Sequence record: MN453779.2 | Strand: one strand, 5' to 3' | Length of the DNA stretch: 64,000 nucleotides | In this document: piece after piece, positions 6,982 through 52,339 of the stretch | Layout of the letters: each line of letters begins with the position of its first letter | Numbering within the stretch: position 1 is the first letter of the stretch | The notes under the pieces: model-generated | What the model was told of the DNA's origin: nothing | Databases searched by the model: none | Seen by the model: the letters and a program-made list of their open reading frames with translations, nothing else | Position numbers and translations under genes: made by a program

Positions 6982-9240
6982 ATGTCAAAAGGTTCCGTAA
7001 TGAAAACGAATCTTGATCCTGCCAAATGTCCTTTCTGCGGTTCGCCCGAAGTGGAGTACCCAACACCCCGGACTGTTTATTCTTGCGGGACTAATGATTA
7101 TGACGGCCGCCCTGAATCAGCAATGCAATCTGAAACGTGTAAAGAGCGTGTGCTAGCTAAACCTGTTCACACTACCCAGTTTGAAAAGAAATTTGGTATT
7201 AAGGAAGAAGATTGCAAAAACAAATATGAGTTGTGGTATTTCAAAACACTTCTTTCTTTACTGGAAGATGGAACAGTTAAAGACGACCGGACCAATACAG
7301 GAACACGTTCTATTCCGTTCCATACATATCAACACGATCTTCGTGAATCTTATCCGCTGATGAAGTCTCGTTATCTGGATCCCTTTAATCCTATTAAAGA
7401 AATGATCTGGATGTTGAGTGGTTCTTCTAATGTTAAACCTCTTCAGGAAATGGGAGTTCCTTTCTGGAATAGTTTTGCTGATGAAGACGGAGAGTTGGGT
7501 CCTGTTTACGGTGTACAGTGGCGTCATTGGAAAACCCCTGATGGTGAAGAAGTAGATCAAATCCAATATGTTCTTGACCTACTGGAGAATGAACCTACGT
7601 CTCGTCGTATGGTGGTTAGTTGCTGGAATCCATCCTTTATCCCAGTCGCTAAAACCGCACCGAAAGATAATCCGAAGCTAGGTAAGATGAGCTTGACACC
7701 TTGCTTTGTAGCAGGAACACCTGTTTTAACACCACATGGCTATGTTGATATAGAAAGTTTAAACGCAGGAGATTTGGTTGTAACGGATAAGGGTAATATA
7801 CAGCCGATAAATCATAAATGGATAACTGAATACACTGGCGAAATTATAGGCCTTTCTATGGTCTACCAGACAGAATTAATACAGTGTACACCAAACCACC
7901 CGTTTCTAATTAAAAATAAAGGGTATATTGAATGTAAGGATATCAAGATTGGTGATAAACTTGGGATATTAAGGCCTAAATTTTCCGATCGAGTGCATGT
8001 AAACAACTGGTCAGTGTTAAATAGTTATCACCAAACCATTTCACATAGCGAGGAACTTAATAAAAACGATTATTATTTTCTTGGGTATTTTTTAGGAAAT
8101 GGATGGGTGTCACAAACACAACCTAGAGTTAGTGTGGCAATACCAAACAGTAAAGTGGAATGGTTGTTACCTAAAATAAGAAATTCGATAAAATTGATTC
8201 ATAAACCAGGCATTTCCCCTAACGTAGCTACATACGCTACAAAATCGCAAAAGTGGTGGGGGTTGTTAAAAGAATTTGGTCATGGTGCTAGTAACAAAAA
8301 GATACCTGAATGGATTTTTACTTCCCCTATCGAGTTTGTAGAGGAGTTTATTAAAGGGTATAAAGACGCCGATGGGTTCGAATCTAAAAATAGAAAAGTG
8401 ATCTCTTATACAACCACTTCTAGATCTTTAGCCTATGGACTTCAAAGATTATACGCTGGTTTAGGTAGACACGCGGCGGTATACAAACAAAAAAGACCTA
8501 CAACAACTATTATCGAGGGAAGGTGTGTAAATCAAAAAGACACTTACATGGTAAACCTTAGATCAAGAACAGTACATGATGTGGAAATGGATGGAGACTA
8601 CCTATGGGTCCCAGTGAACGGTATAGGGAAAAAGACAACTTCATGTTTGGTTTACAACTACGACGTAGGTCATGACCACACTTACGTGGTGCATAACTAC
8701 GCCACACACAACTGCCATTTTTCATTTGTTCTCACAGCAACACCAATGAACTTTGGTGACAGACTAAACTATTTCAAACATTCTCACCCAACCATCTACA
8801 GTAATCTTTATCCAATCTCTGGTAAAGGTTGGACCGAGCGTGCTGAAGAAGCAATGAATCATCGCAATGTTCCTAAGTTCTATCTTGATCTTAGTTTCAT
8901 CATGCGGTCTAATGACTTTATTCTTGGTAACCCCGCTAACCTGAATGAATACGCTGCTCTATGTATGATGTTTGCACAACAACGCAACATGATCGCGCGC
9001 TATGTCAATTACACTGGTATTGATGTTCATATCTACTCTAACCACATTGCTGGTGCTAGAGAACAGATTGATTATGTCAAGAAACATCCGGAGATCTTTA
9101 CTGATGAACCAGCTAAAATACATATTGGTTTGAACGGGAAACCTAATACAATATTTGAATACACTGTTGATCATTTTGTAGTCCAAGATTACCATCGTGA
9201 AAATACTGGACCGGTAATTCGTTTCCCAATTGCTGTATAA
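6982..9240 (+). CDS. thyA: Thymidylate synthase (ThyA type) precursor containing an intein
   Basis: DDRTNTGT, EMIWML, ELGPVYGVQWRHW, SRRMVVSCWNP, LTP|CHF, RSNDFILGNPAN, DVHIYSNH. Confidence 0.95.
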   Translation: MSKGSVMKTNLDPAKCPFCGSPEVEYPTPRTVYSCGTNDYDGRPESAMQSETCKERVLAKPVHTTQFEKKFGIKEEDCKNKYELWYFKTLLSLLEDGTVKDDRTNTGTRSIPFHTYQHDLRESYPLMKSRYLDPFNPIKEMIWMLSGSSNVKPLQEMGVPFWNSFADEDGELGPVYGVQWRHWKTPDGEEVDQIQYVLDLLENEPTSRRMVVSCWNPSFIPVAKTAPKDNPKLGKMSLTPCFVAGTPVLTPHGYVDIESLNAGDLVVTDKGNIQPINHKWITEYTGEIIGLSMVYQTELIQCTPNHPFLIKNKGYIECKDIKIGDKLGILRPKFSDRVHVNNWSVLNSYHQTISHSEELNKNDYYFLGYFLGNGWVSQTQPRVSVAIPNSKVEWLLPKIRNSIKLIHKPGISPNVATYATKSQKWWGLLKEFGHGASNKKIPEWIFTSPIEFVEEFIKGYKDADGFESKNRKVISYTTTSRSLAYGLQRLYAGLGRHAAVYKQKRPTTTIIEGRCVNQKDTYMVNLRSRTVHDVEMDGDYLWVPVNGIGKKTTSCLVYNYDVGHDHTYVVHNYATHNCHFSFVLTATPMNFGDRLNYFKHSHPTIYSNLYPISGKGWTERAEEAMNHRNVPKFYLDLSFIMRSNDFILGNPANLNEYAALCMMFAQQRNMIARYVNYTGIDVHIYSNHIAGAREQIDYVKKHPEIFTDEPAKIHIGLNGKPNTIFEYTVDHFVVQDYHRENTGPVIRFPIAV
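7702..8712 (+). mobile_element. Intein (337 aa) with LAGLIDADG homing endonuclease
   Basis: Begins CFVAGTPV, ends VYNYDVGHDHTYVVHNYATHN, +1 residue Cys; endonuclease blocks FLGYFLGNG and FIKGYKDADG; removal restores LTPCH. Confidence 0.95.
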
Positions 9241-45703: not shown

Positions 45704-47581
45704 ATGAGTAGACAACCTACTAACTTTACGCTGCTTGATCCTAAAACGTTTCCAATAGAACTCATGTCACCCGTGACAGTAGCAGATTCGTTTGAAGGTC
45801 AAACCACTAACTTACACGAAGACGGACTCTACTCGACCAGGATCTTTGGTCGAGTAGGTACTGATGAACGAGATAAAACCGAATCTTACATTAATTCCTT
45901 ATTGCCCATTTTCAATCCCACGTATTTTAAAGCATTAGTGCAGTTAAAATCACTTTACTTAGATATAGTAAAGGGTAAGGCATATGCTGTATGGGATGAG
46001 ACAGAACGTGATTTCATAAAATCTAACGTCCTGGAAGGCGATACAGGATTTGCGTTTTTTATGACTCATTTTGGTGAATTAGATCCAAAACCAAATCAGT
46101 CTTTTAAACGAACTCAGAAGATCACTTTGGTTAATAATTTCCGTGATCGAGCTTTGAATAAACACATTCCAGTTATTCCGGCGGGGATCCGAGACATTGA
46201 AATCGGACCTACTGGATTAGTTACTGAAAATGAGATTAACGATCTTTATCGTAAATTGATTTTCCGTACTAAGTCACTGACTACCAAGAACCCTGATCCA
46301 CTTGATCCAGTTTATGATAATATTCACTGGGGAATGCAGGAGTCTTTGAACAACATTGACCAACATCTCTTTGAGTTACAGGAGGGTAAACGAGGTTTCA
46401 TGCAGCGTCGAATGAGCCGACGTTCTATCCACTCTGCAACTCGTAACGTGATCGTCTCTCGTAAAGTCTCTGTAGAGAATATGGATGATAATGTCACTGG
46501 CGATCCTAACTCCACTTTTATTGGGATGTACCAAGCACTACTTGGCTATAACCTAGTTGCTACACACGAACTTCTTAACGGTTTCTTATCTGAAGTATTT
46601 ACTCCTGGTTTGGATAAAGCACGTCTAGTGGAACCTAAGAGTTTAGAGAGTGCTTATGTGGATGTAGATCCCTACACAGTAGATAAGTTTACTTCTGCCG
46701 ATGGAATTGGTAAACTCTTTAATGGGTTTAGTGACCCCAATGTTCGTAACCGTCCTATTAAGGTAGCTGGTCATTACTTAGGTTTACTTTATGACGATGG
46801 TAAAAACGTTTGCTTAGTTCATGATGTAAATGACCTAGGTGAAGGAATGGATAAGAAGTATCTCCATCCTGTTACCTATATGCAATTCTTTTATATCCAG
46901 ACCGTAAAAGCAATTGAAAAGAAGATGTTACAAATTACTCGTTACCCAATTACTGGGATAGGATCCATTGTACCTACACGAGTGTTTGTTCTTCCAACTA
47001 CAGCCACGTCAGAATCAAGAACATTGATTGACATCGATGGTAGTAAGTTGGATAGTTTTCACTTCTTTCCAGTGTGGACTAAAAATCCCAGTTACTTTGA
47101 TGGGATGAGTATTAGTAACGTACGCTTAGCAGCTGCTGGTGGTGACTTCGACGGTATTTCTGTTTGCCGCTTTTAGTAGTAATACTAATCGAATAAGTGC
47201 GGAATAAAGCAAGGAATCTCTCCATTTAGAGATAACTTGAACCGAAGGCTTACTGTAAATGGTAAGTCAGGGGCAGAGCGTAGATAGTGAACCTCTTTCA
47301 TTAAAGAGAATATAATCTATCCAAGAGGCCGCACCATCCTACTGGGATGAAAACGTACGCCGATACCCGGAGCGATCTGGGAGTGAAGATAAAAAACTTC
47401 ACATTAACATTTGGACCAACTATCAGCCAACAGCATTCAAGCTAAAGATTCAGTAGAAGAAATTGAGACTTTGTTTGGTAAACGTATATTCTATATTTCT
47501 GGAGCAGGTGACTTCCTATATGACCCTGTACAGGAACCACACGCGTTCCTTTTACGTTCATTGACCAATGGATTATCGTAA
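45704..47581 (+). CDS. rpoC: Virion RNA polymerase beta-prime catalytic subunit (phiKZ gp180-like); spliced join(45704..47155,47414..47581), 539 aa
   Basis: LHEDGLYSTRIFG, EGKRGF, RYP; catalytic GGDFDG|DQ restored by removing the intron; exon 2 is open to TAA 47579-47581. Confidence 0.92.
47156..47413 (+). mobile_element. Group I intron (258 nt, no ORF) in the DFDGD motif
   Basis: 5-prime exon ends in U, intron ends in G; P1 CGGU/GCCG; P3 GTGCGG 47197/CCGCAC 47329; P7 GCGTA 47278/TACGC 47356; P8, P9 (GCGA loop), P9.1. Confidence 0.92.
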
Positions 47582-50500: not shown

Positions 50501-52339
50501 TCCTGACTGATAGCAGTATGCAACCAGTTGAAGAAGTCAATCCAGTCCATCAACTGAAACAGCAAGAAGAAGTTACGTTTGGCGGGACCTTTGGTCGAAG
50601 TGATCAAGCAATGGTACGTCGCACACGTGGTCAATTACCAAGTTACGCAGGGATCATCTCTGAAGCTGGTAAGGACTCAGGTAAAGTAGGATTTATCTCT
50701 TATCTAACTTCTGATGCCAAGATTGTTGACTATGCTGGTAACGTGGATGTGACCCAAGAAACCACCAATGCAGGTCGTGGTTCTGTAACGGCTAACTTAC
50801 TTTATGGTACAACACGCGATGACAGTAAAAGGTAAACACAGCGTCGACGACTTCGACGTTACTGCCCTTACACTTAGAAATGAGTGTTTGCATTAACCCT
50901 TAATTGCTGGGAAGTACTCAAAGATGCTCTTACCGAAACGGAAACCGAAAGGTTATATGGAAAGGTTTGAAAAGTAGAGCGGAGAGACAGTCAGCAGCGG
51001 AGCGTCTAAGTATATTCGTGATGAATAGATATGACGAGCGTTCAACGACTAGGGGTGAAACTCCCCGTAGCTGGAACAAGGAATGTTCCTACCAAACAGG
51101 GTTACCTTACTGTGTTGCTGAAGAAGCAACTAGACAGTTGGTTGAAATATAGTCTGCTCCTTATAGTGATATAGGGCGGGTGCTAGGTATCGCACCGGGT
51201 CTTAGGATAAGACTGGACATAAGGCGTTGTTCTCAGGTGTTCAGCTAAGTCAATGGATGGCTACTGATAGTTACGTTGCTAACCCTATTAGAACTCCTTC
51301 TGATAGCGTAGTAGCTTATCGTAACTCAGAACTCTATTGTTCTTATGCTAAAGAAGTGGGAACTATTACTGCTATCACTCCTGACGGGATGACTGTTAAG
51401 TATGATAATGGTAGTGAAGAGAAATTCCCACTTGGCTATGAAGTAGGTAAAGGTGCTGGTGAGTATCACAAACATCTTAAAATCACCGATATGAAAGTTG
51501 GTGACAAAGTTGAGAAAGGTGATGTACTTGCTTGGGATGATTGCTTCTACACTCGGGATTTAACCAATCCAAAACGGATTGTTATTAAGCTTGGGACAAT
51601 GGCTCGTATTGCATTGGTAGAAGATCAATTTACCTTTGAGGATTCCATTGGGATTACTCAGAAGTACGCAGATCTTAATACCACGCCATATCTCAAAAAC
51701 AATGAGTTTAGAATAGGTTATGAACAAGCCATTAAACTCTATGTCAAAGTTGGGGATAAGGTAGAATACGATCAAATATTAGCTGATGTGATGGATCCTT
51801 CTTCTGCCATGTTTGAAGAGGAAAGTGTTAATTCCATTGCTGGTTTGGATCGTCTTGGTATTAAACAGATCAAAGCTAAACAAGCTGGTATAATCACTAA
51901 GATCGATGTTATCTATAACGGTGACTTAGATACGGCAGAAGAGTCTTTGAAAACATTCATTCAGGAACAAGATAAGCTACGTGCTAAGAAAGCTAAGTTC
52001 AGAGAACTTGCTGCTACTAATGGGAACGTTGGTGGTAACACATCAGTAGGTAAGTCAAAGGTCTATCCCAATACAGCAGCAGTAACTATTACCATCGAGA
52101 GTAAACTCACCACCACAACTGCTGATAAGTTTGTAGCGGGTAACCAGATGAAAGGTACAGTAGGGTTTATTTACCCAGATCCTATTTATACTGTTGATGG
52201 TCGGGAAGTTGATGTTAAGTTCTCTTTGAAGTCTTTGCTTAACCGAATGGTATTAAGTCTTCGTGATAAACTGGTAGCTAATGAGTTGAACCATGTTTAC
52301 ACTAGTCGTATGATGAAAAAATATGGGAGATATGAATAA
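47581..52339 (+). CDS. rpoB: Virion RNA polymerase beta subunit, large piece (phiKZ gp178-like); spliced join(47581..50833,51225..52339), 1455 aa
   Basis: FTINGVK, NPV, RTRGQLPSYAGII, DSGKVG, RDDSKR|SLFSGVQ, FTFEDSI, DKFVAGNQMKG. Confidence 0.9.
50834..51224 (+). mobile_element. Group IA intron (391 nt, no ORF) in the RNAP beta gene
   Basis: P AATTGCTGGGAA 50902, Q CAGTCAGCAG 50988, R GTTCAACGACTAG 51040, S AAATATAGTC 51145; P3 AACCCT/AGGGTT; U|...G| junction restores the frame. Confidence 0.92.

What the first reader, a model, noticed from the sequence alone, without database searches (positions are those of the whole stretch)
7702..8712. Intein inserted so that the ThyA catalytic cysteine is its +1 nucleophile
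Seen: LTP|CFVAGT...THN|CHF. Known: the Cys of the PCH motif is the thymidylate synthase nucleophile. The same Cys must drive trans-esterification before it can act in dTMP synthesis, so activity depends strictly on splicing. Both LAGLIDADG blocks look intact, suggesting an active or recent invasion. With the two introns, three unrelated self-splicing elements in this window all sit in catalytic or near-catalytic motifs.
Basis: partly seen in the sequence, partly recalled or inferred. Interest (0 to 1): 0.65.

Follow-up and report, generated by a model that had tools for sequence, protein, structure and literature searches.

The report
Intein at thymidylate synthase catalytic cysteine
The thymidylate synthase gene of Aeromonas jumbo phage PS2 is interrupted, exactly in front of its catalytic cysteine, by a self-excising protein element (intein); the kind is well known, but this one belongs to a large, apparently undescribed lineage that sits at Pro-Cys active-site motifs of two unrelated enzymes.

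Summary
Window 7702-8712 (+) is a 337-residue, in-frame class-1 intein with a LAGLIDADG endonuclease domain. It lies in ORF 6982-9240, which is PS2_0193 of Aeromonas phage PS2 (identical in PS1) and is annotated only as "putative thymidylate synthase".

- **Insertion site.** The intein sits between Pro240 and the Cys of the ThyA P-C-H motif. Four relatives carry the exact empty allele (...LT[P/A]|CH...). One of them is 98% identical in protein.
- **Catalytic residues.** All splicing residues and all TS catalytic residues are present. An AlphaFold model gives a TS fold (TM 0.9 to E. coli TS) with an intein excursion.
The first LAGLIDADG motif reads G-N-G, not G-D-G. About half of this intein's clade shares the Asn, while the second motif's Asp is nearly invariant.
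- **Not unique.** At least 78 metagenomic protein clusters carry an intein at the same ThyA site.
- **Nearest relatives.** The closest non-ThyA kin sit at the Pro|Cys-Gln catalytic motif of DNA cytosine-C5 methyltransferases.
- **Mobility.** The inteins are more conserved than their host genes, which suggests horizontal spread between thyA genes.
- **Unusual junction.** The residue before the intein is almost always Pro, which blocks or impairs most inteins tested in the laboratory.

Splicing and endonuclease activity are inferred, not shown. I found no paper describing a ThyA intein. An overlapping window flagged the same stretch (s1-414006).

The parts
6982..9240 (+). Precursor ORF (PS2_0193, 752 aa plus stop): ThyA-family enzyme interrupted by an intein
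   Evidence: It is 100% identical to Aeromonas phage PS1 and PS2, where it is annotated 'putative thymidylate synthase' with no intein feature.
6982..7701 (+). N-extein (240 aa). Residues 1-85 are a Cys-rich N-terminal extension. Residues 86-240 are the N-half of the TS fold and end in ...K-M-S-L-T-P.
   Evidence: PF00303 6.9e-41. TIGR03284 scores 115.7 bits against a cut-off of 108.35. R208 and R209 are invariant. Residues 1-58 have pLDDT below 50.
7702..8712 (+). Class-1 intein, 337 aa, with an embedded LAGLIDADG homing-endonuclease domain
   Evidence: Pfam Hint_2, PT-HINT, LAGLIDADG_3 and Hom_end. It is absent from four empty alleles at the exact codon boundary. Foldseek matches the TliVMA intein 7qsu at E 8e-19, and also PI-SceI and PI-TkoII.
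7702..7704 (+). Cys1 (TGC), the N-terminal splicing nucleophile; block A is C-F-V-A-G-T
   Evidence: Invariant in 24 ThyA-site inteins (C241).
7888..7899 (+). Block B T-P-N-H (intein Thr63 ... His66)
   Evidence: T303 and H306 invariant.
8017..8571 (+). Homing-endonuclease domain (approximately intein residues 106-290)
   Evidence: PF14528 covers residues 212-271 and PF05204 covers 200-290. The model shows helix/strand repeats at precursor residues 361-527. The domain is as conserved as the splicing domain (44.7% against 40-42%).
8080..8106 (+). LAGLIDADG motif 1: L-G-Y-F-L-G-N-G-W. Asn133 (AAT 8098-8100) replaces the usual catalytic Asp.
   Evidence: In the window's clade this position is Asn in 26 and Asp in 23 of 51 representatives.
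8347..8382 (+). LAGLIDADG motif 2: F-I-K-G-Y-K-D-A-D-G-F-E, with Asp224 (GAT 8371-8373) canonical
   Evidence: Asp in 49 of 51 clade members.
8650..8712 (+). Blocks F and G, ending in His336-Asn337 (8707-8712)
   Evidence: N577 is invariant and H576 is at least 90% conserved.
8713..8715 (+). +1 Cys (TGC). It is the second splicing nucleophile and, after splicing, the Cys of the TS P-C-H motif (equivalent to E. coli Cys146).
   Evidence: C578 and H579 are invariant.
8713..9240 (+). C-extein (175 aa plus stop). It is the C-half of the TS fold, with an insert of about 45 aa after the C-H strand and then the R-S-x-D...N, H and Y catalytic residues.
   Evidence: PF00303 2.3e-19. phmmer alignment to E. 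coli TS. R642, S643, D645, N653, H683 and Y685 are conserved.

Best explanation
Window 7702-8712 encodes a genuine class-1 intein: a HINT splicing domain with an inserted LAGLIDADG endonuclease domain. It has invaded the thyA-type thymidylate synthase gene of Aeromonas phage PS2/PS1 between Pro and the catalytic Cys of the P-C-H motif.

Inferred mechanism:
1. The 752-aa precursor folds.
2. Cys1 makes the N-S acyl shift at the Pro240-Cys241 bond.
3. The thiol of the +1 Cys (Cys578) takes over the N-extein by trans-thioesterification.
4. Asn337 cyclises, helped by His336, and releases the intein.
5. An S-N shift restores a normal Pro-Cys peptide bond.
6. The result is a 415-aa enzyme whose freed Cys thiol is then the nucleophile that attacks C6 of dUMP.

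At the DNA level the element is, or recently was, mobile between thyA genes through its endonuclease. It is the only cultured-phage member found here of a large lineage of inteins. That lineage occupies the Pro|Cys nucleophile motif of ThyA (P-C-H) and of DNA cytosine-C5 methyltransferases (P-C-Q).
For: Shown directly:
- Exact boundaries and reading frame.
- Pfam HINT and LAGLIDADG domains nested in a split PF00303.
- Precise empty alleles in ACP1, pAEv1810 and AVP1 (86-88% aa), and in a Logan contig with 98% aa and 94% nt identity and the same gene neighbourhood.
- Invariance of Cys1, Thr/His of block B, terminal Asn, +1 Cys and +2 His in 24 precursors.
- TS identity: TIGR03284 is above its cut-off for the N-extein alone and for the empty ACP1 allele; the Arg, Ser, Asp, Asn, His and Tyr catalytic set is conserved; DHFR lies 2 kb downstream.
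- AF2 model with pLDDT 82. Its extein halves together match E. coli TS at TM 0.9, and the insert matches the TliVMA and PI-SceI inteins.

Lineage:
- An exhaustive HMMER scan of 1.84 billion representatives gave 125 hits at E <= 1e-30.
- Among the best 150, 78 have ...P|C...HN|CH (the ThyA site) and the top 43 are all of this type. About 40 have G[FS]P|C...HN|C[Q/T..]xxS (C5-MTase). About 10 use a second ThyA site, GP|CYGxQWR.
- Trees on whole inteins, on HINT columns alone and on endonuclease columns alone all unite the ThyA inteins with one MTase-intein clade, apart from the other MTase inteins (support 90-99).

Mobility:
- The intein is 70-72% identical to its nearest relatives, while their exteins are only 39-58% identical. 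The same trend holds across most of the family.
- The endonuclease domain is as conserved as the splicing domain.
Against: - No experiment: splicing, TS activity and endonuclease activity are all inferred.
- LAGLIDADG motif 1 has Asn for the catalytic Asp. In characterised enzymes such as I-CreI D20N this abolishes cleavage (my own knowledge), so present-day mobility is uncertain.
- No co-conversion tract is visible around the insertion site when compared with the closest empty allele.
- Pro at -1 impairs most inteins tested in vitro (PMC6486613), so splicing might be slow.
- Junction residues have low pLDDT in the model.
- PF14890 (Intein_splicing) scores 33.5 bits, just below its 35.8 cut-off.
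- The tree root is at the midpoint only, and the AU tests did not finish. The direction and number of host switches are therefore not settled.
Confidence: 0.85

Rival explanations
1. The intein is a stranded passenger. Its endonuclease is dead because motif 1 carries Asn instead of Asp, it no longer homes, and it persists in PS1/PS2 only because imprecise loss would destroy thyA.
For: Asn133 replaces the metal-binding Asp. No co-conversion tract is seen next to the insertion. Among the Ferozepurvirus relatives examined, only PS1/PS2 carry it.
Against: The G-N-G variant is shared by 26 of 51 representatives of the clade, across less than 50% sequence identity, while motif 2 keeps Asp in 49 of 51. 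The endonuclease domain is at least as conserved as the splicing domain and shows no shrinkage (median length 341 aa). Inteins are more similar than their exteins, as expected if this lineage still moves. A one-sited enzyme could act as a nickase, and engineered LAGLIDADG nickases still drive gene conversion (my own knowledge).
Confidence: 0.3
2. The intein is kept as a regulator. Splicing is conditional, through a Cys1/Cys+1 disulfide or zinc inhibition, so the phage gates dTMP synthesis by the redox or metal state of the cell.
For: Both junction nucleophiles are Cys. Redox-trapped and zinc-inhibited inteins exist (zinc-inhibited DnaB intein cited in PMC8616854; redox traps from my own knowledge). 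Phage inteins with tuned splicing rates have been proposed as regulators (PMC5050341). The unusual -1 Pro could slow the first step (PMC6486613).
Against: Nothing in the sequence is specific to regulation. The closest relatives manage without the intein. The pattern of sporadic presence, an intein more conserved than its host gene, and a retained endonuclease is that of a selfish mobile element.
Confidence: 0.12
3. The host protein is not a dTMP-forming thymidylate synthase. It is a ThyA-fold pyrimidine hydroxymethylase or another base-modifying enzyme, so the Cys is a nucleophile but not 'the TS nucleophile'.
For: The protein is atypical. It has an 85-aa Cys-rich N-terminal extension and an insert of about 45 aa after the C-H strand. 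NCBIfam PRK01827-type equivalog scores are below their cut-offs. Jumbo phages often modify their DNA (my own knowledge).
Against: TIGR03284 is above its cut-off. Asn653 aligns with E. coli Asn177, the residue that selects dUMP over dCMP (the role is from my own knowledge). A DHFR gene lies 2 kb downstream and a thymidine kinase gene about 5.5 kb downstream, which fits a dihydrofolate-producing TS cycle. The best structural matches are all bona fide TS.
Confidence: 0.1
4. The intein no longer splices, and thyA is a dead gene in PS1/PS2, tolerated because the host Aeromonas supplies dTMP.
For: No experimental evidence for splicing exists. Pro at -1 is unfavourable in model inteins (PMC6486613). 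Phage thyA may be dispensable.
Against: The 2259-nt frame is intact. Every splicing residue (Cys1, TxxH, His-Asn, Cys+1) and every TS catalytic residue is conserved. 61 of 69 representatives at this ThyA site also have -1 Pro, so this junction is the family norm and not a lesion.
Confidence: 0.06

Closest known systems
Inteins of phage DNA cytosine-C5 methyltransferases (e.g. Escherichia phage UE-S1 UES1_076, Lactobacillus phage Nyseid, Mannheimia phage 587AP2). C-5 methylase is listed as an intein host in actinobacteriophages (bioRxiv 10.1101/2025.01.02.630785).
   Same: They are the closest sequence relatives outside ThyA (27-38% identity over the full length). The architecture is the same: class 1 with a LAGLIDADG domain, about 340-365 aa, block A C-F-V-A-G-T. 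The placement is the same: directly after Pro and before the catalytic Cys (G-F-P|C-Q). Both host enzymes use that Cys to attack C6 of a pyrimidine.
   Different: The host enzymes are not homologous (Rossmann-fold SAM methyltransferase against the TS fold). The +2 residue is Gln rather than His. The flanking DNA shares only CCN|TGYCA.
ThyX (flavin-dependent thymidylate synthase) inteins of mycobacteriophages and Actinobacteria/Cyanobacteria (Kelley et al. 2016, PMC5050341; Novikova et al. 2016, PMC4760082)
   Same: An intein in a dTMP-synthesis enzyme of phages, located in an active centre.
   Different: ThyX (COG1351, IPR003669) is unrelated to ThyA in fold and mechanism and has no catalytic Cys. 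These are the only 'thymidylate synthase' inteins I found described.
Group I introns in phage thyA/td genes (T4 td with I-TevI; Bacillus phage thy introns)
   Same: The same host gene is targeted by a self-splicing mobile element with a homing endonuclease, at a conserved region (PMC5009752 for I-TevI/td; the rest is my own knowledge).
   Different: Those elements splice at the RNA level, are ribozymes and not proteins, use a GIY-YIG endonuclease, and have a different insertion point.
Archetypal LAGLIDADG inteins PI-SceI (VMA1) and the TliVMA intein (PDB 1vde, 1ef0, 7qsu)
   Same: The two-domain fold is the same (Foldseek E 8e-19 to 4e-14), as is the class-1 chemistry with Cys1 / His-Asn / Cys+1.
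   Different: Sequence identity is 12-20%. Those enzymes have acidic residues in both LAGLIDADG motifs, while this one has Asn in motif 1. They also lack a Pro at -1.

Membership tests
Class-1 intein (HINT domain) | N-terminal Cys/Ser nucleophile at intein position 1 | tested here: met
   Cys1 = TGC 7702-7704. Invariant in 24 relatives.
Class-1 intein (HINT domain) | Block B T-x-x-H | tested here: met
   T-P-N-H at intein residues 63-66. T303 and H306 invariant.
Class-1 intein (HINT domain) | C-terminal His-Asn followed by a Cys/Ser/Thr at +1 | tested here: met
   H336-N337|C (8707-8715). N577 and C578 invariant.
Class-1 intein (HINT domain) | HINT fold / profile match | tested here: met
   PF13403 scores 40.6 bits (cut-off 28.4) and PF07591 scores 32.8 (cut-off 27.7). 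PF14890 scores 33.5, just under its 35.8 cut-off. Foldseek matches intein structures.
Class-1 intein (HINT domain) | In-frame insertion in a conserved host protein, with intein-less alleles joined exactly at the junction | tested here: met
   Four empty alleles.
Class-1 intein (HINT domain) | Protein splicing actually occurs | not testable with these tools
   This needs expression with western blot or mass spectrometry.
LAGLIDADG homing endonuclease (two-motif, monomeric) | Two LAGLIDADG helices, each ending in a metal-binding Asp or Glu | tested here: inconclusive
   Motif 2 has Asp224. Motif 1 has Asn133 instead of Asp. The Asn variant is conserved in half of the clade.
LAGLIDADG homing endonuclease (two-motif, monomeric) | Profile and fold match | tested here: met
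   PF14528 scores 47.8 bits (cut-off 22.5) and PF05204 scores 28.5 (cut-off 21.1). The model aligns to the TliVMA and PI-SceI endonuclease domains.
LAGLIDADG homing endonuclease (two-motif, monomeric) | Site-specific cleavage of the empty allele | not testable with these tools
   An in vitro cleavage or nicking assay is needed.
ThyA-type thymidylate synthase (PF00303 / TIGR03284) | Profile match above the curated cut-off | tested here: met
   PF00303 1.1e-61. TIGR03284 scores 115.7 bits for the N-extein alone and 152.7 for the empty ACP1 allele, against a cut-off of 108.35. The two exteins were searched separately and never joined.
ThyA-type thymidylate synthase (PF00303 / TIGR03284) | Catalytic P-C-H Cys plus the Arg, Ser, Asp, Asn, His and Tyr substrate-binding set | tested here: met
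   P240|C578-H579, R208/R209, R642, S643, D645, N653, H683 and Y685 are conserved.
ThyA-type thymidylate synthase (PF00303 / TIGR03284) | TS fold | tested here: met
   The AF2 model against E. coli TS gives a target-normalised TM of 0.88-0.91.
ThyA-type thymidylate synthase (PF00303 / TIGR03284) | Converts dUMP and methylene-THF to dTMP and DHF | not testable with these tools
   Supported only by context: DHFR and thymidine kinase genes lie nearby.

The most novel reading that the evidence does not exclude
PS2's intein is the only cultured-phage member found here of a large, undescribed intein lineage specialised for a Pro(-1)|Cys(+1) junction.

- The lineage has hopped at least twice between the catalytic Pro-Cys motifs of two non-homologous pyrimidine-C5-methylating enzymes: ThyA (P-C-H) and Dcm-type methyltransferases (P-C-Q). 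It has also reached a second Pro-preceded ThyA site.
- What the sites share is the splice-junction chemistry, not a long endonuclease target. The shared DNA is only CCN|TGYCA.
- Two corollaries follow. First, these are natural inteins that splice efficiently with Pro at -1, a context that defeats most inteins used in protein engineering. Second, the conserved Asn in LAGLIDADG motif 1, with Asp kept in motif 2, marks a natural single-site (nicking) homing endonuclease.
Probability: 0.35. Interest if true: 0.62.

Novelty: new member of a known kind. Interest (0 to 1): 0.45.

Why it matters
- **Annotation.** PS1/PS2 gene 0191/0193 should be annotated as a ThyA precursor with an intein. The mature enzyme is 415 aa, not 752.
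- **Intein biology.** ThyA at the P|C-H site appears to be an uncatalogued but abundant intein insertion site. PS1/PS2 are the only isolates in a 50,697-record phage collection that carry it, so they provide a culturable test system.
- **Evolution.** Kinship with the inteins at P|C-Q of C5-methyltransferases is a clean example of an intein lineage moving between non-homologous genes that share only a short catalytic motif.
- **Biotechnology.** A family of more than 100 natural inteins with Pro at -1 could supply splicing tools for junctions that current inteins handle poorly (PMC6486613).
- **Endonuclease.** The asymmetric G-N-G / A-D-G pair is a candidate natural nickase.
- **Limits.** None of this changes the known picture of what inteins are.

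Tried and rejected
- **Rfam at gathering thresholds:** no hit in the whole window. At E <= 1 there was only a sub-threshold group I intron at 50836-51176. The '258-nt intron' is invisible to Rfam. I only checked that its flanks read ...G-G-D-F-D-G | D....
- **Co-conversion tract:** mismatches between PS2 and the 94%-identical empty allele (L011) are spread evenly. There were 5 and 1 in the first 60 nt on either side of the site, so there is no signal.
- **Shared endonuclease target:** the 24-nt flanks of ThyA-site and MTase-site inteins agree at only 5-11 of 24 positions per side, close to chance, apart from CCN|TGYCA. This does not explain the host switches.
- **Composition:** the intein is slightly lower in GC (0.33-0.40 against 0.39-0.43) and more A-rich. 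The difference is suggestive only.
- **AU tests** for monophyly of the MTase or ThyA inteins did not finish in the time allowed. I relied on SH-aLRT support and on separate HINT-only and endonuclease-only trees instead.
- **The genome search 'own':** no genome is held for this window. I searched the PS2 record through a locus handle instead.
- **Literature:** searches for ThyA or thymidylate synthase with intein, and for cytosine methyltransferase with intein, returned only ThyX inteins, N6/N4-methylase inteins and one listing of C-5 methylase as a host. Absence from this library does not prove the site is unpublished, and InBase could not be consulted.
- **Joined extein:** I did not build or search a joined (spliced) extein sequence. 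The exteins were analysed separately by reference, and natural empty alleles served as the spliced model.
- **Read-mapping tools** were not used, because RNA or DNA reads cannot show protein splicing.
- **phmmer alignment to PDB TS chains** skipped the P-C-H strand itself because of the downstream insert. The motif assignment rests on the Pfam profile coordinates, on invariance, and on the fold match.
Full report
**Where the window comes from.** ORF 6982-9240 is 100% identical to 'putative thymidylate synthase' of Aeromonas phages PS1 and PS2. The window coordinates map one-to-one onto the last 64 kb of PS2, MN453779.2. PS2 is a 240-kb jumbo phage of the genus Ferozepurvirus. Neither record annotates an intein.

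**The observation.**
- The ORF encodes 752 aa.
- The DNA reads ...TTG ACA CCT | TGC TTT GTA... at 7702 and ...CAC AAC | TGC CAT TTT... at 8712/8713.
- This gives ...S-L-T-P|C-F-V-A-G-T ... Y-A-T-H-N|C-H-F-S-F, an insert of exactly 337 codons.
- Pfam finds Thymidylat_synt split into residues 86-243 and the C-terminal part. Between them lie Hint_2, PT-HINT, LAGLIDADG_3 and Hom_end.
- Three sister phages (ACP1, pAEv1810, AVP1; 86-88% aa identity) have a 414-aa gene. In it the same flanks are joined as ...LT[A/P]-C-H... with nothing between.
- A metagenomic contig (Logan ERR12379740) has the same neighbours: acetyltransferase, DHFR, ClpP and GroEL. It carries an empty allele that is 98% (aa) and 94% (nt) identical to the PS2 exteins.

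**The host enzyme.**
Each was searched by reference, and the natural empty alleles served as the spliced form.
- The N-extein alone passes the TIGR03284 thymidylate synthase cut-off (115.7 against 108.35 bits). The empty ACP1 allele scores 152.7.
- phmmer aligns both halves to E. coli, M. tuberculosis and C. glutamicum TS.
- In an alignment of 24 intein-bearing homologues, several residues are invariant or nearly so. They are the Cys-His after the intein, the S-R-R arginines (R208, R209), R642-S643-x-D645, N653, H683 and Y685.
- These match the E. coli R126/R127, R166, S167, D169, N177, H207 and Y209 set. The residue roles come from my own knowledge of TS.
- Asn at the 177-equivalent points to dUMP as substrate. 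DHFR lies 2 kb downstream and thymidine kinase about 5.5 kb downstream. Both fit a dihydrofolate-producing TS.
- The protein is nevertheless atypical. It has an 85-aa Cys-rich N-terminal extension (pLDDT below 50 for residues 1-58) and an insert of about 45 aa after the C-H strand.
- An AlphaFold2 model of the precursor (24-sequence alignment, mean pLDDT 82) places the two extein halves together in a TS fold. TM normalised to E. coli TS is 0.88-0.91.
- In that model the insert forms a separate two-domain body. It matches the TliVMA intein (E 8e-19), PI-SceI and PI-TkoII.
- The junction residues (237-240, 575-579) have low confidence.

**The intein.**
- All class-1 hallmarks are present. These are Cys1, block B T-P-N-H (Thr63, His66), and blocks F and G ending in His336-Asn337, followed by Cys+1.
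- The canonical four-step mechanism therefore applies by inference. The thiol of Cys578 must first accept the N-extein as a thioester. Only after Asn cyclisation and the S-N shift does it become the free thiol of the P-C-H motif.
- That the unspliced precursor is inactive is a reasonable inference. A 337-aa domain is attached to the backbone nitrogen of the nucleophile, at an active site that in TS lies by the dimer interface. It has not been shown.

**A correction on the endonuclease.**
- LAGLIDADG motif 2 (G-Y-K-D-A-D-G) is canonical.
- Motif 1 reads L-G-Y-F-L-G-N-G-W, with Asn133 (AAT, 8098-8100) at the position of the metal-binding Asp.
- This is not a private lesion. In the 52-member clade that holds the window, this position is Asn in 26 and Asp in 23 representatives. 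Motif 2 keeps Asp in 49 of 51.
- The endonuclease domain is as conserved as the splicing domain (mean identity to PS2 44.7% against 40-42%). Lengths are stable (median 341 aa).
- The asymmetry argues against random decay. It is compatible with an enzyme that has one full catalytic centre, possibly a nickase. That is speculation to be tested.

**Not unique: a large family at the same site.**
- A word-based search with the precursor found 27 further PF00303 proteins with an intein at ...[P/A/S]|C-F ... H-N|C-H.
- An exhaustive HMMER scan of 1.84 billion cluster representatives with the intein alone gave 8146 hits at E <= 1e-3 and 125 at E <= 1e-30. I classified the best 150 by their junctions:
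  - 78 are ...P|C...HN|C-H, the ThyA site, and the top 43 are all of this type.
  - About 40 are G-[F/S]-P|C...HN|C-[Q/T/I/V/G]-x-x-S, which is motif IV of C5-cytosine methyltransferases.
  - About 10 sit at a second ThyA site, G-D-[I/L]-G-P|C-Y-G-x-Q-W-R.
  - A handful are in other proteins.
- Some hosts are DHFR-TS fusions carrying two inteins (P0029, P0031).
- One JGI record is already auto-named 'thymidylate synthase/intein/homing endonuclease'.
- In the 50,697-record phage collection, the only ThyA-site members of this lineage are PS1 and PS2. Every other hit is at most 31% identical and lies in a methyltransferase, NrdD, terminase, polymerase or similar gene.

**Kinship with C5-methyltransferase inteins.**
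- In phages UE-S1, Mannheimia 587AP2 and Nyseid, the related intein lies at G-F-P|C...H-N|C-Q. That is again directly after Pro and before the catalytic Cys.
- A tree of 85 inteins (LG+C20 PMSF) has a clade with SH-aLRT 99. It holds all ThyA inteins plus 21 MTase inteins. The other 26 MTase inteins and the NrdD, SufB, RadA, SNF2 and terminase inteins lie outside it.
- A second tree used the unbiased representative set (130 inteins) and gives the same picture. A 102-member group (support 90) contains 69 first-site ThyA inteins, 10 second-site ThyA inteins and one 19-member MTase clade. The window sits in a 52-member, almost purely ThyA clade (support 99).
- Trees from HINT columns alone and from endonuclease columns alone agree, so this is not an effect of domain swapping.
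- Starred branches force at least two changes for the MTase label and three for the ThyA label.
- The root is at the midpoint only and the AU tests did not finish. I therefore claim repeated switching between the two kinds of site, not its direction.

**What links the sites.**
- ThyA and C5-MTases are not homologous. Both use a Pro-Cys cysteine to attack C6 of a pyrimidine (my own knowledge).
- At the DNA level the flanks share only CCN|TGYCA. The remaining 24 nt on each side match at chance level. A common long endonuclease target is therefore not the explanation.
- The common feature is the junction itself. Position -1 is Pro in 61 of 69 ThyA-site representatives, and that set was defined by the +1/+2 residues alone. 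All the MTase sites I defined also have Pro, but there Pro was part of my classification rule.
- Pro at -1 is reported to block or impair natural and engineered inteins (PMC6486613, citing Mathys 1999, Iwai 2006, Appleby-Tagoe 2011 and Cheriyan 2013).
- A lineage adapted to Pro(-1)/Cys(+1) would find few acceptable sites. The Pro-Cys nucleophile motifs of these two enzyme families are among them. This is my preferred explanation, and it is an inference.

**Mobility and age.**
- The PS2 intein is 70-72% identical to its nearest relatives (P0006-P0008). Their exteins are only 52-58% (N-extein) and 39-42% (C-extein) identical.
- The intein is more conserved than the exteins for most of the family. 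For an enzyme as conserved as TS, this suggests horizontal intein transfer between diverged thyA genes.
- The 98%-identical empty allele shows that gain, or precise loss, is recent on the scale of about 6% nucleotide divergence.
- No co-conversion tract is visible. Composition differs only mildly.

**Literature.**
- In the searchable library I found inteins described in ThyX (Kelley 2016, PMC5050341; Novikova 2016, PMC4760082; actinobacteriophage preprint 10.1101/2025.01.02.630785).
- I also found inteins in N6/N4 methylases, and C-5 methylase listed as a host in the same preprint.
- I found no description of an intein in ThyA. InBase could not be checked.

**Verdict.**
- This is a real, well-preserved intein of a known kind at a typical kind of place, directly in front of a conserved catalytic nucleophile.
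The site is less exceptional than implied, and the claim that both endonuclease motifs are intact is wrong.
- The added value lies in four points. The site is widespread yet apparently uncatalogued. It is kin to the P|C-Q methyltransferase inteins. The junction has Pro at -1. The G-N-G / A-D-G endonuclease is conserved. PS1/PS2 are available as isolates to test all four.
- The statement about other self-splicing elements in the window is plausible. Rfam gives a sub-threshold group I hit at 50836-51176 (E 2e-5). The frames on either side of 47156-47413 read ...D-F-D-G | D.... Both agree with earlier notes s1-157512 and s1-159661.

Noticed in passing
outside the window: PS2 record MN453779.2 10459-13827 (L018:1460-4828): There is a second LAGLIDADG-bearing insert in the same phage, in PS2_0008 'putative DNA helicase/terminase' (1122 aa; PF14528 8e-11 at residues 394-468). 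It is only 23% identical to the ThyA intein and has G-D-G and D-T-D-G motifs. It is probably an independent intein and is not annotated.
   Followed up: partly
window 47156-47413 and 50834-51224: These are two unannotated group I introns in the virion RNA-polymerase genes, reported in earlier notes. Rfam sees only the second, below threshold (35.5 bits, E 2e-5, at 50836-51176). The frames flanking the first read ...G-G-D-F-D-G | D-Q-L-S...
   Followed up: partly
window 6982-7236 (residues 1-85 of the precursor): The ThyA gene has a Cys-rich N-terminal extension (C-P-F-C ... C-G-T ... T-C), conserved in all Ferozepurvirus alleles. It is absent from canonical ThyA and is not confidently folded by AlphaFold (pLDDT below 50 for residues 1-58). 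It may be a zinc ribbon of unknown role.
   Followed up: no
window 8740-8880 (C-extein residues about 10-55): An insert of about 45 residues follows the C-H strand relative to E. coli TS. Inserts at the same place are seen in several metagenomic ThyA hosts of this intein family (e.g. P0011, P0023, P0025).
   Followed up: no
metagenomic proteins P0029, P0031, P0032 and about 10 representatives: There is a second ThyA intein insertion site, G-D-[I/L]-G-P|C(or S)-Y-G-x-Q-W-R, where the +1 nucleophile replaces the usual Val of G-P-V-Y-G. Two AT-rich DHFR-TS fusion proteins carry inteins at both sites.
   Followed up: partly
L008 (Lactococcus phage P1048 nrdD) and relatives AM4, AM5, 949: A related intein (about 26% identical) sits at R-V|C-G-Y, next to the Gly of what I take to be the glycyl-radical motif of the class III ribonucleotide reductase (motif assignment from my own knowledge).
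   Followed up: no
Escherichia phage P1 and RCS47 dmt genes: tblastn shows a full-length match of about 26% identity to the intein inside the dmt DNA methyltransferase gene of phage P1-like records. This suggests an intein in Dmt of some P1 relatives. I did not inspect it.
   Followed up: no
empty alleles L002 (ACP1) and L011 (Logan contig): Two intein-less alleles have Ala (GCT) instead of Pro at the residue before the catalytic Cys (L-T-A-C-H), which is unusual for the ThyA P-C-H motif. This could be a homing-resistant target variant or plain polymorphism.
   Followed up: no
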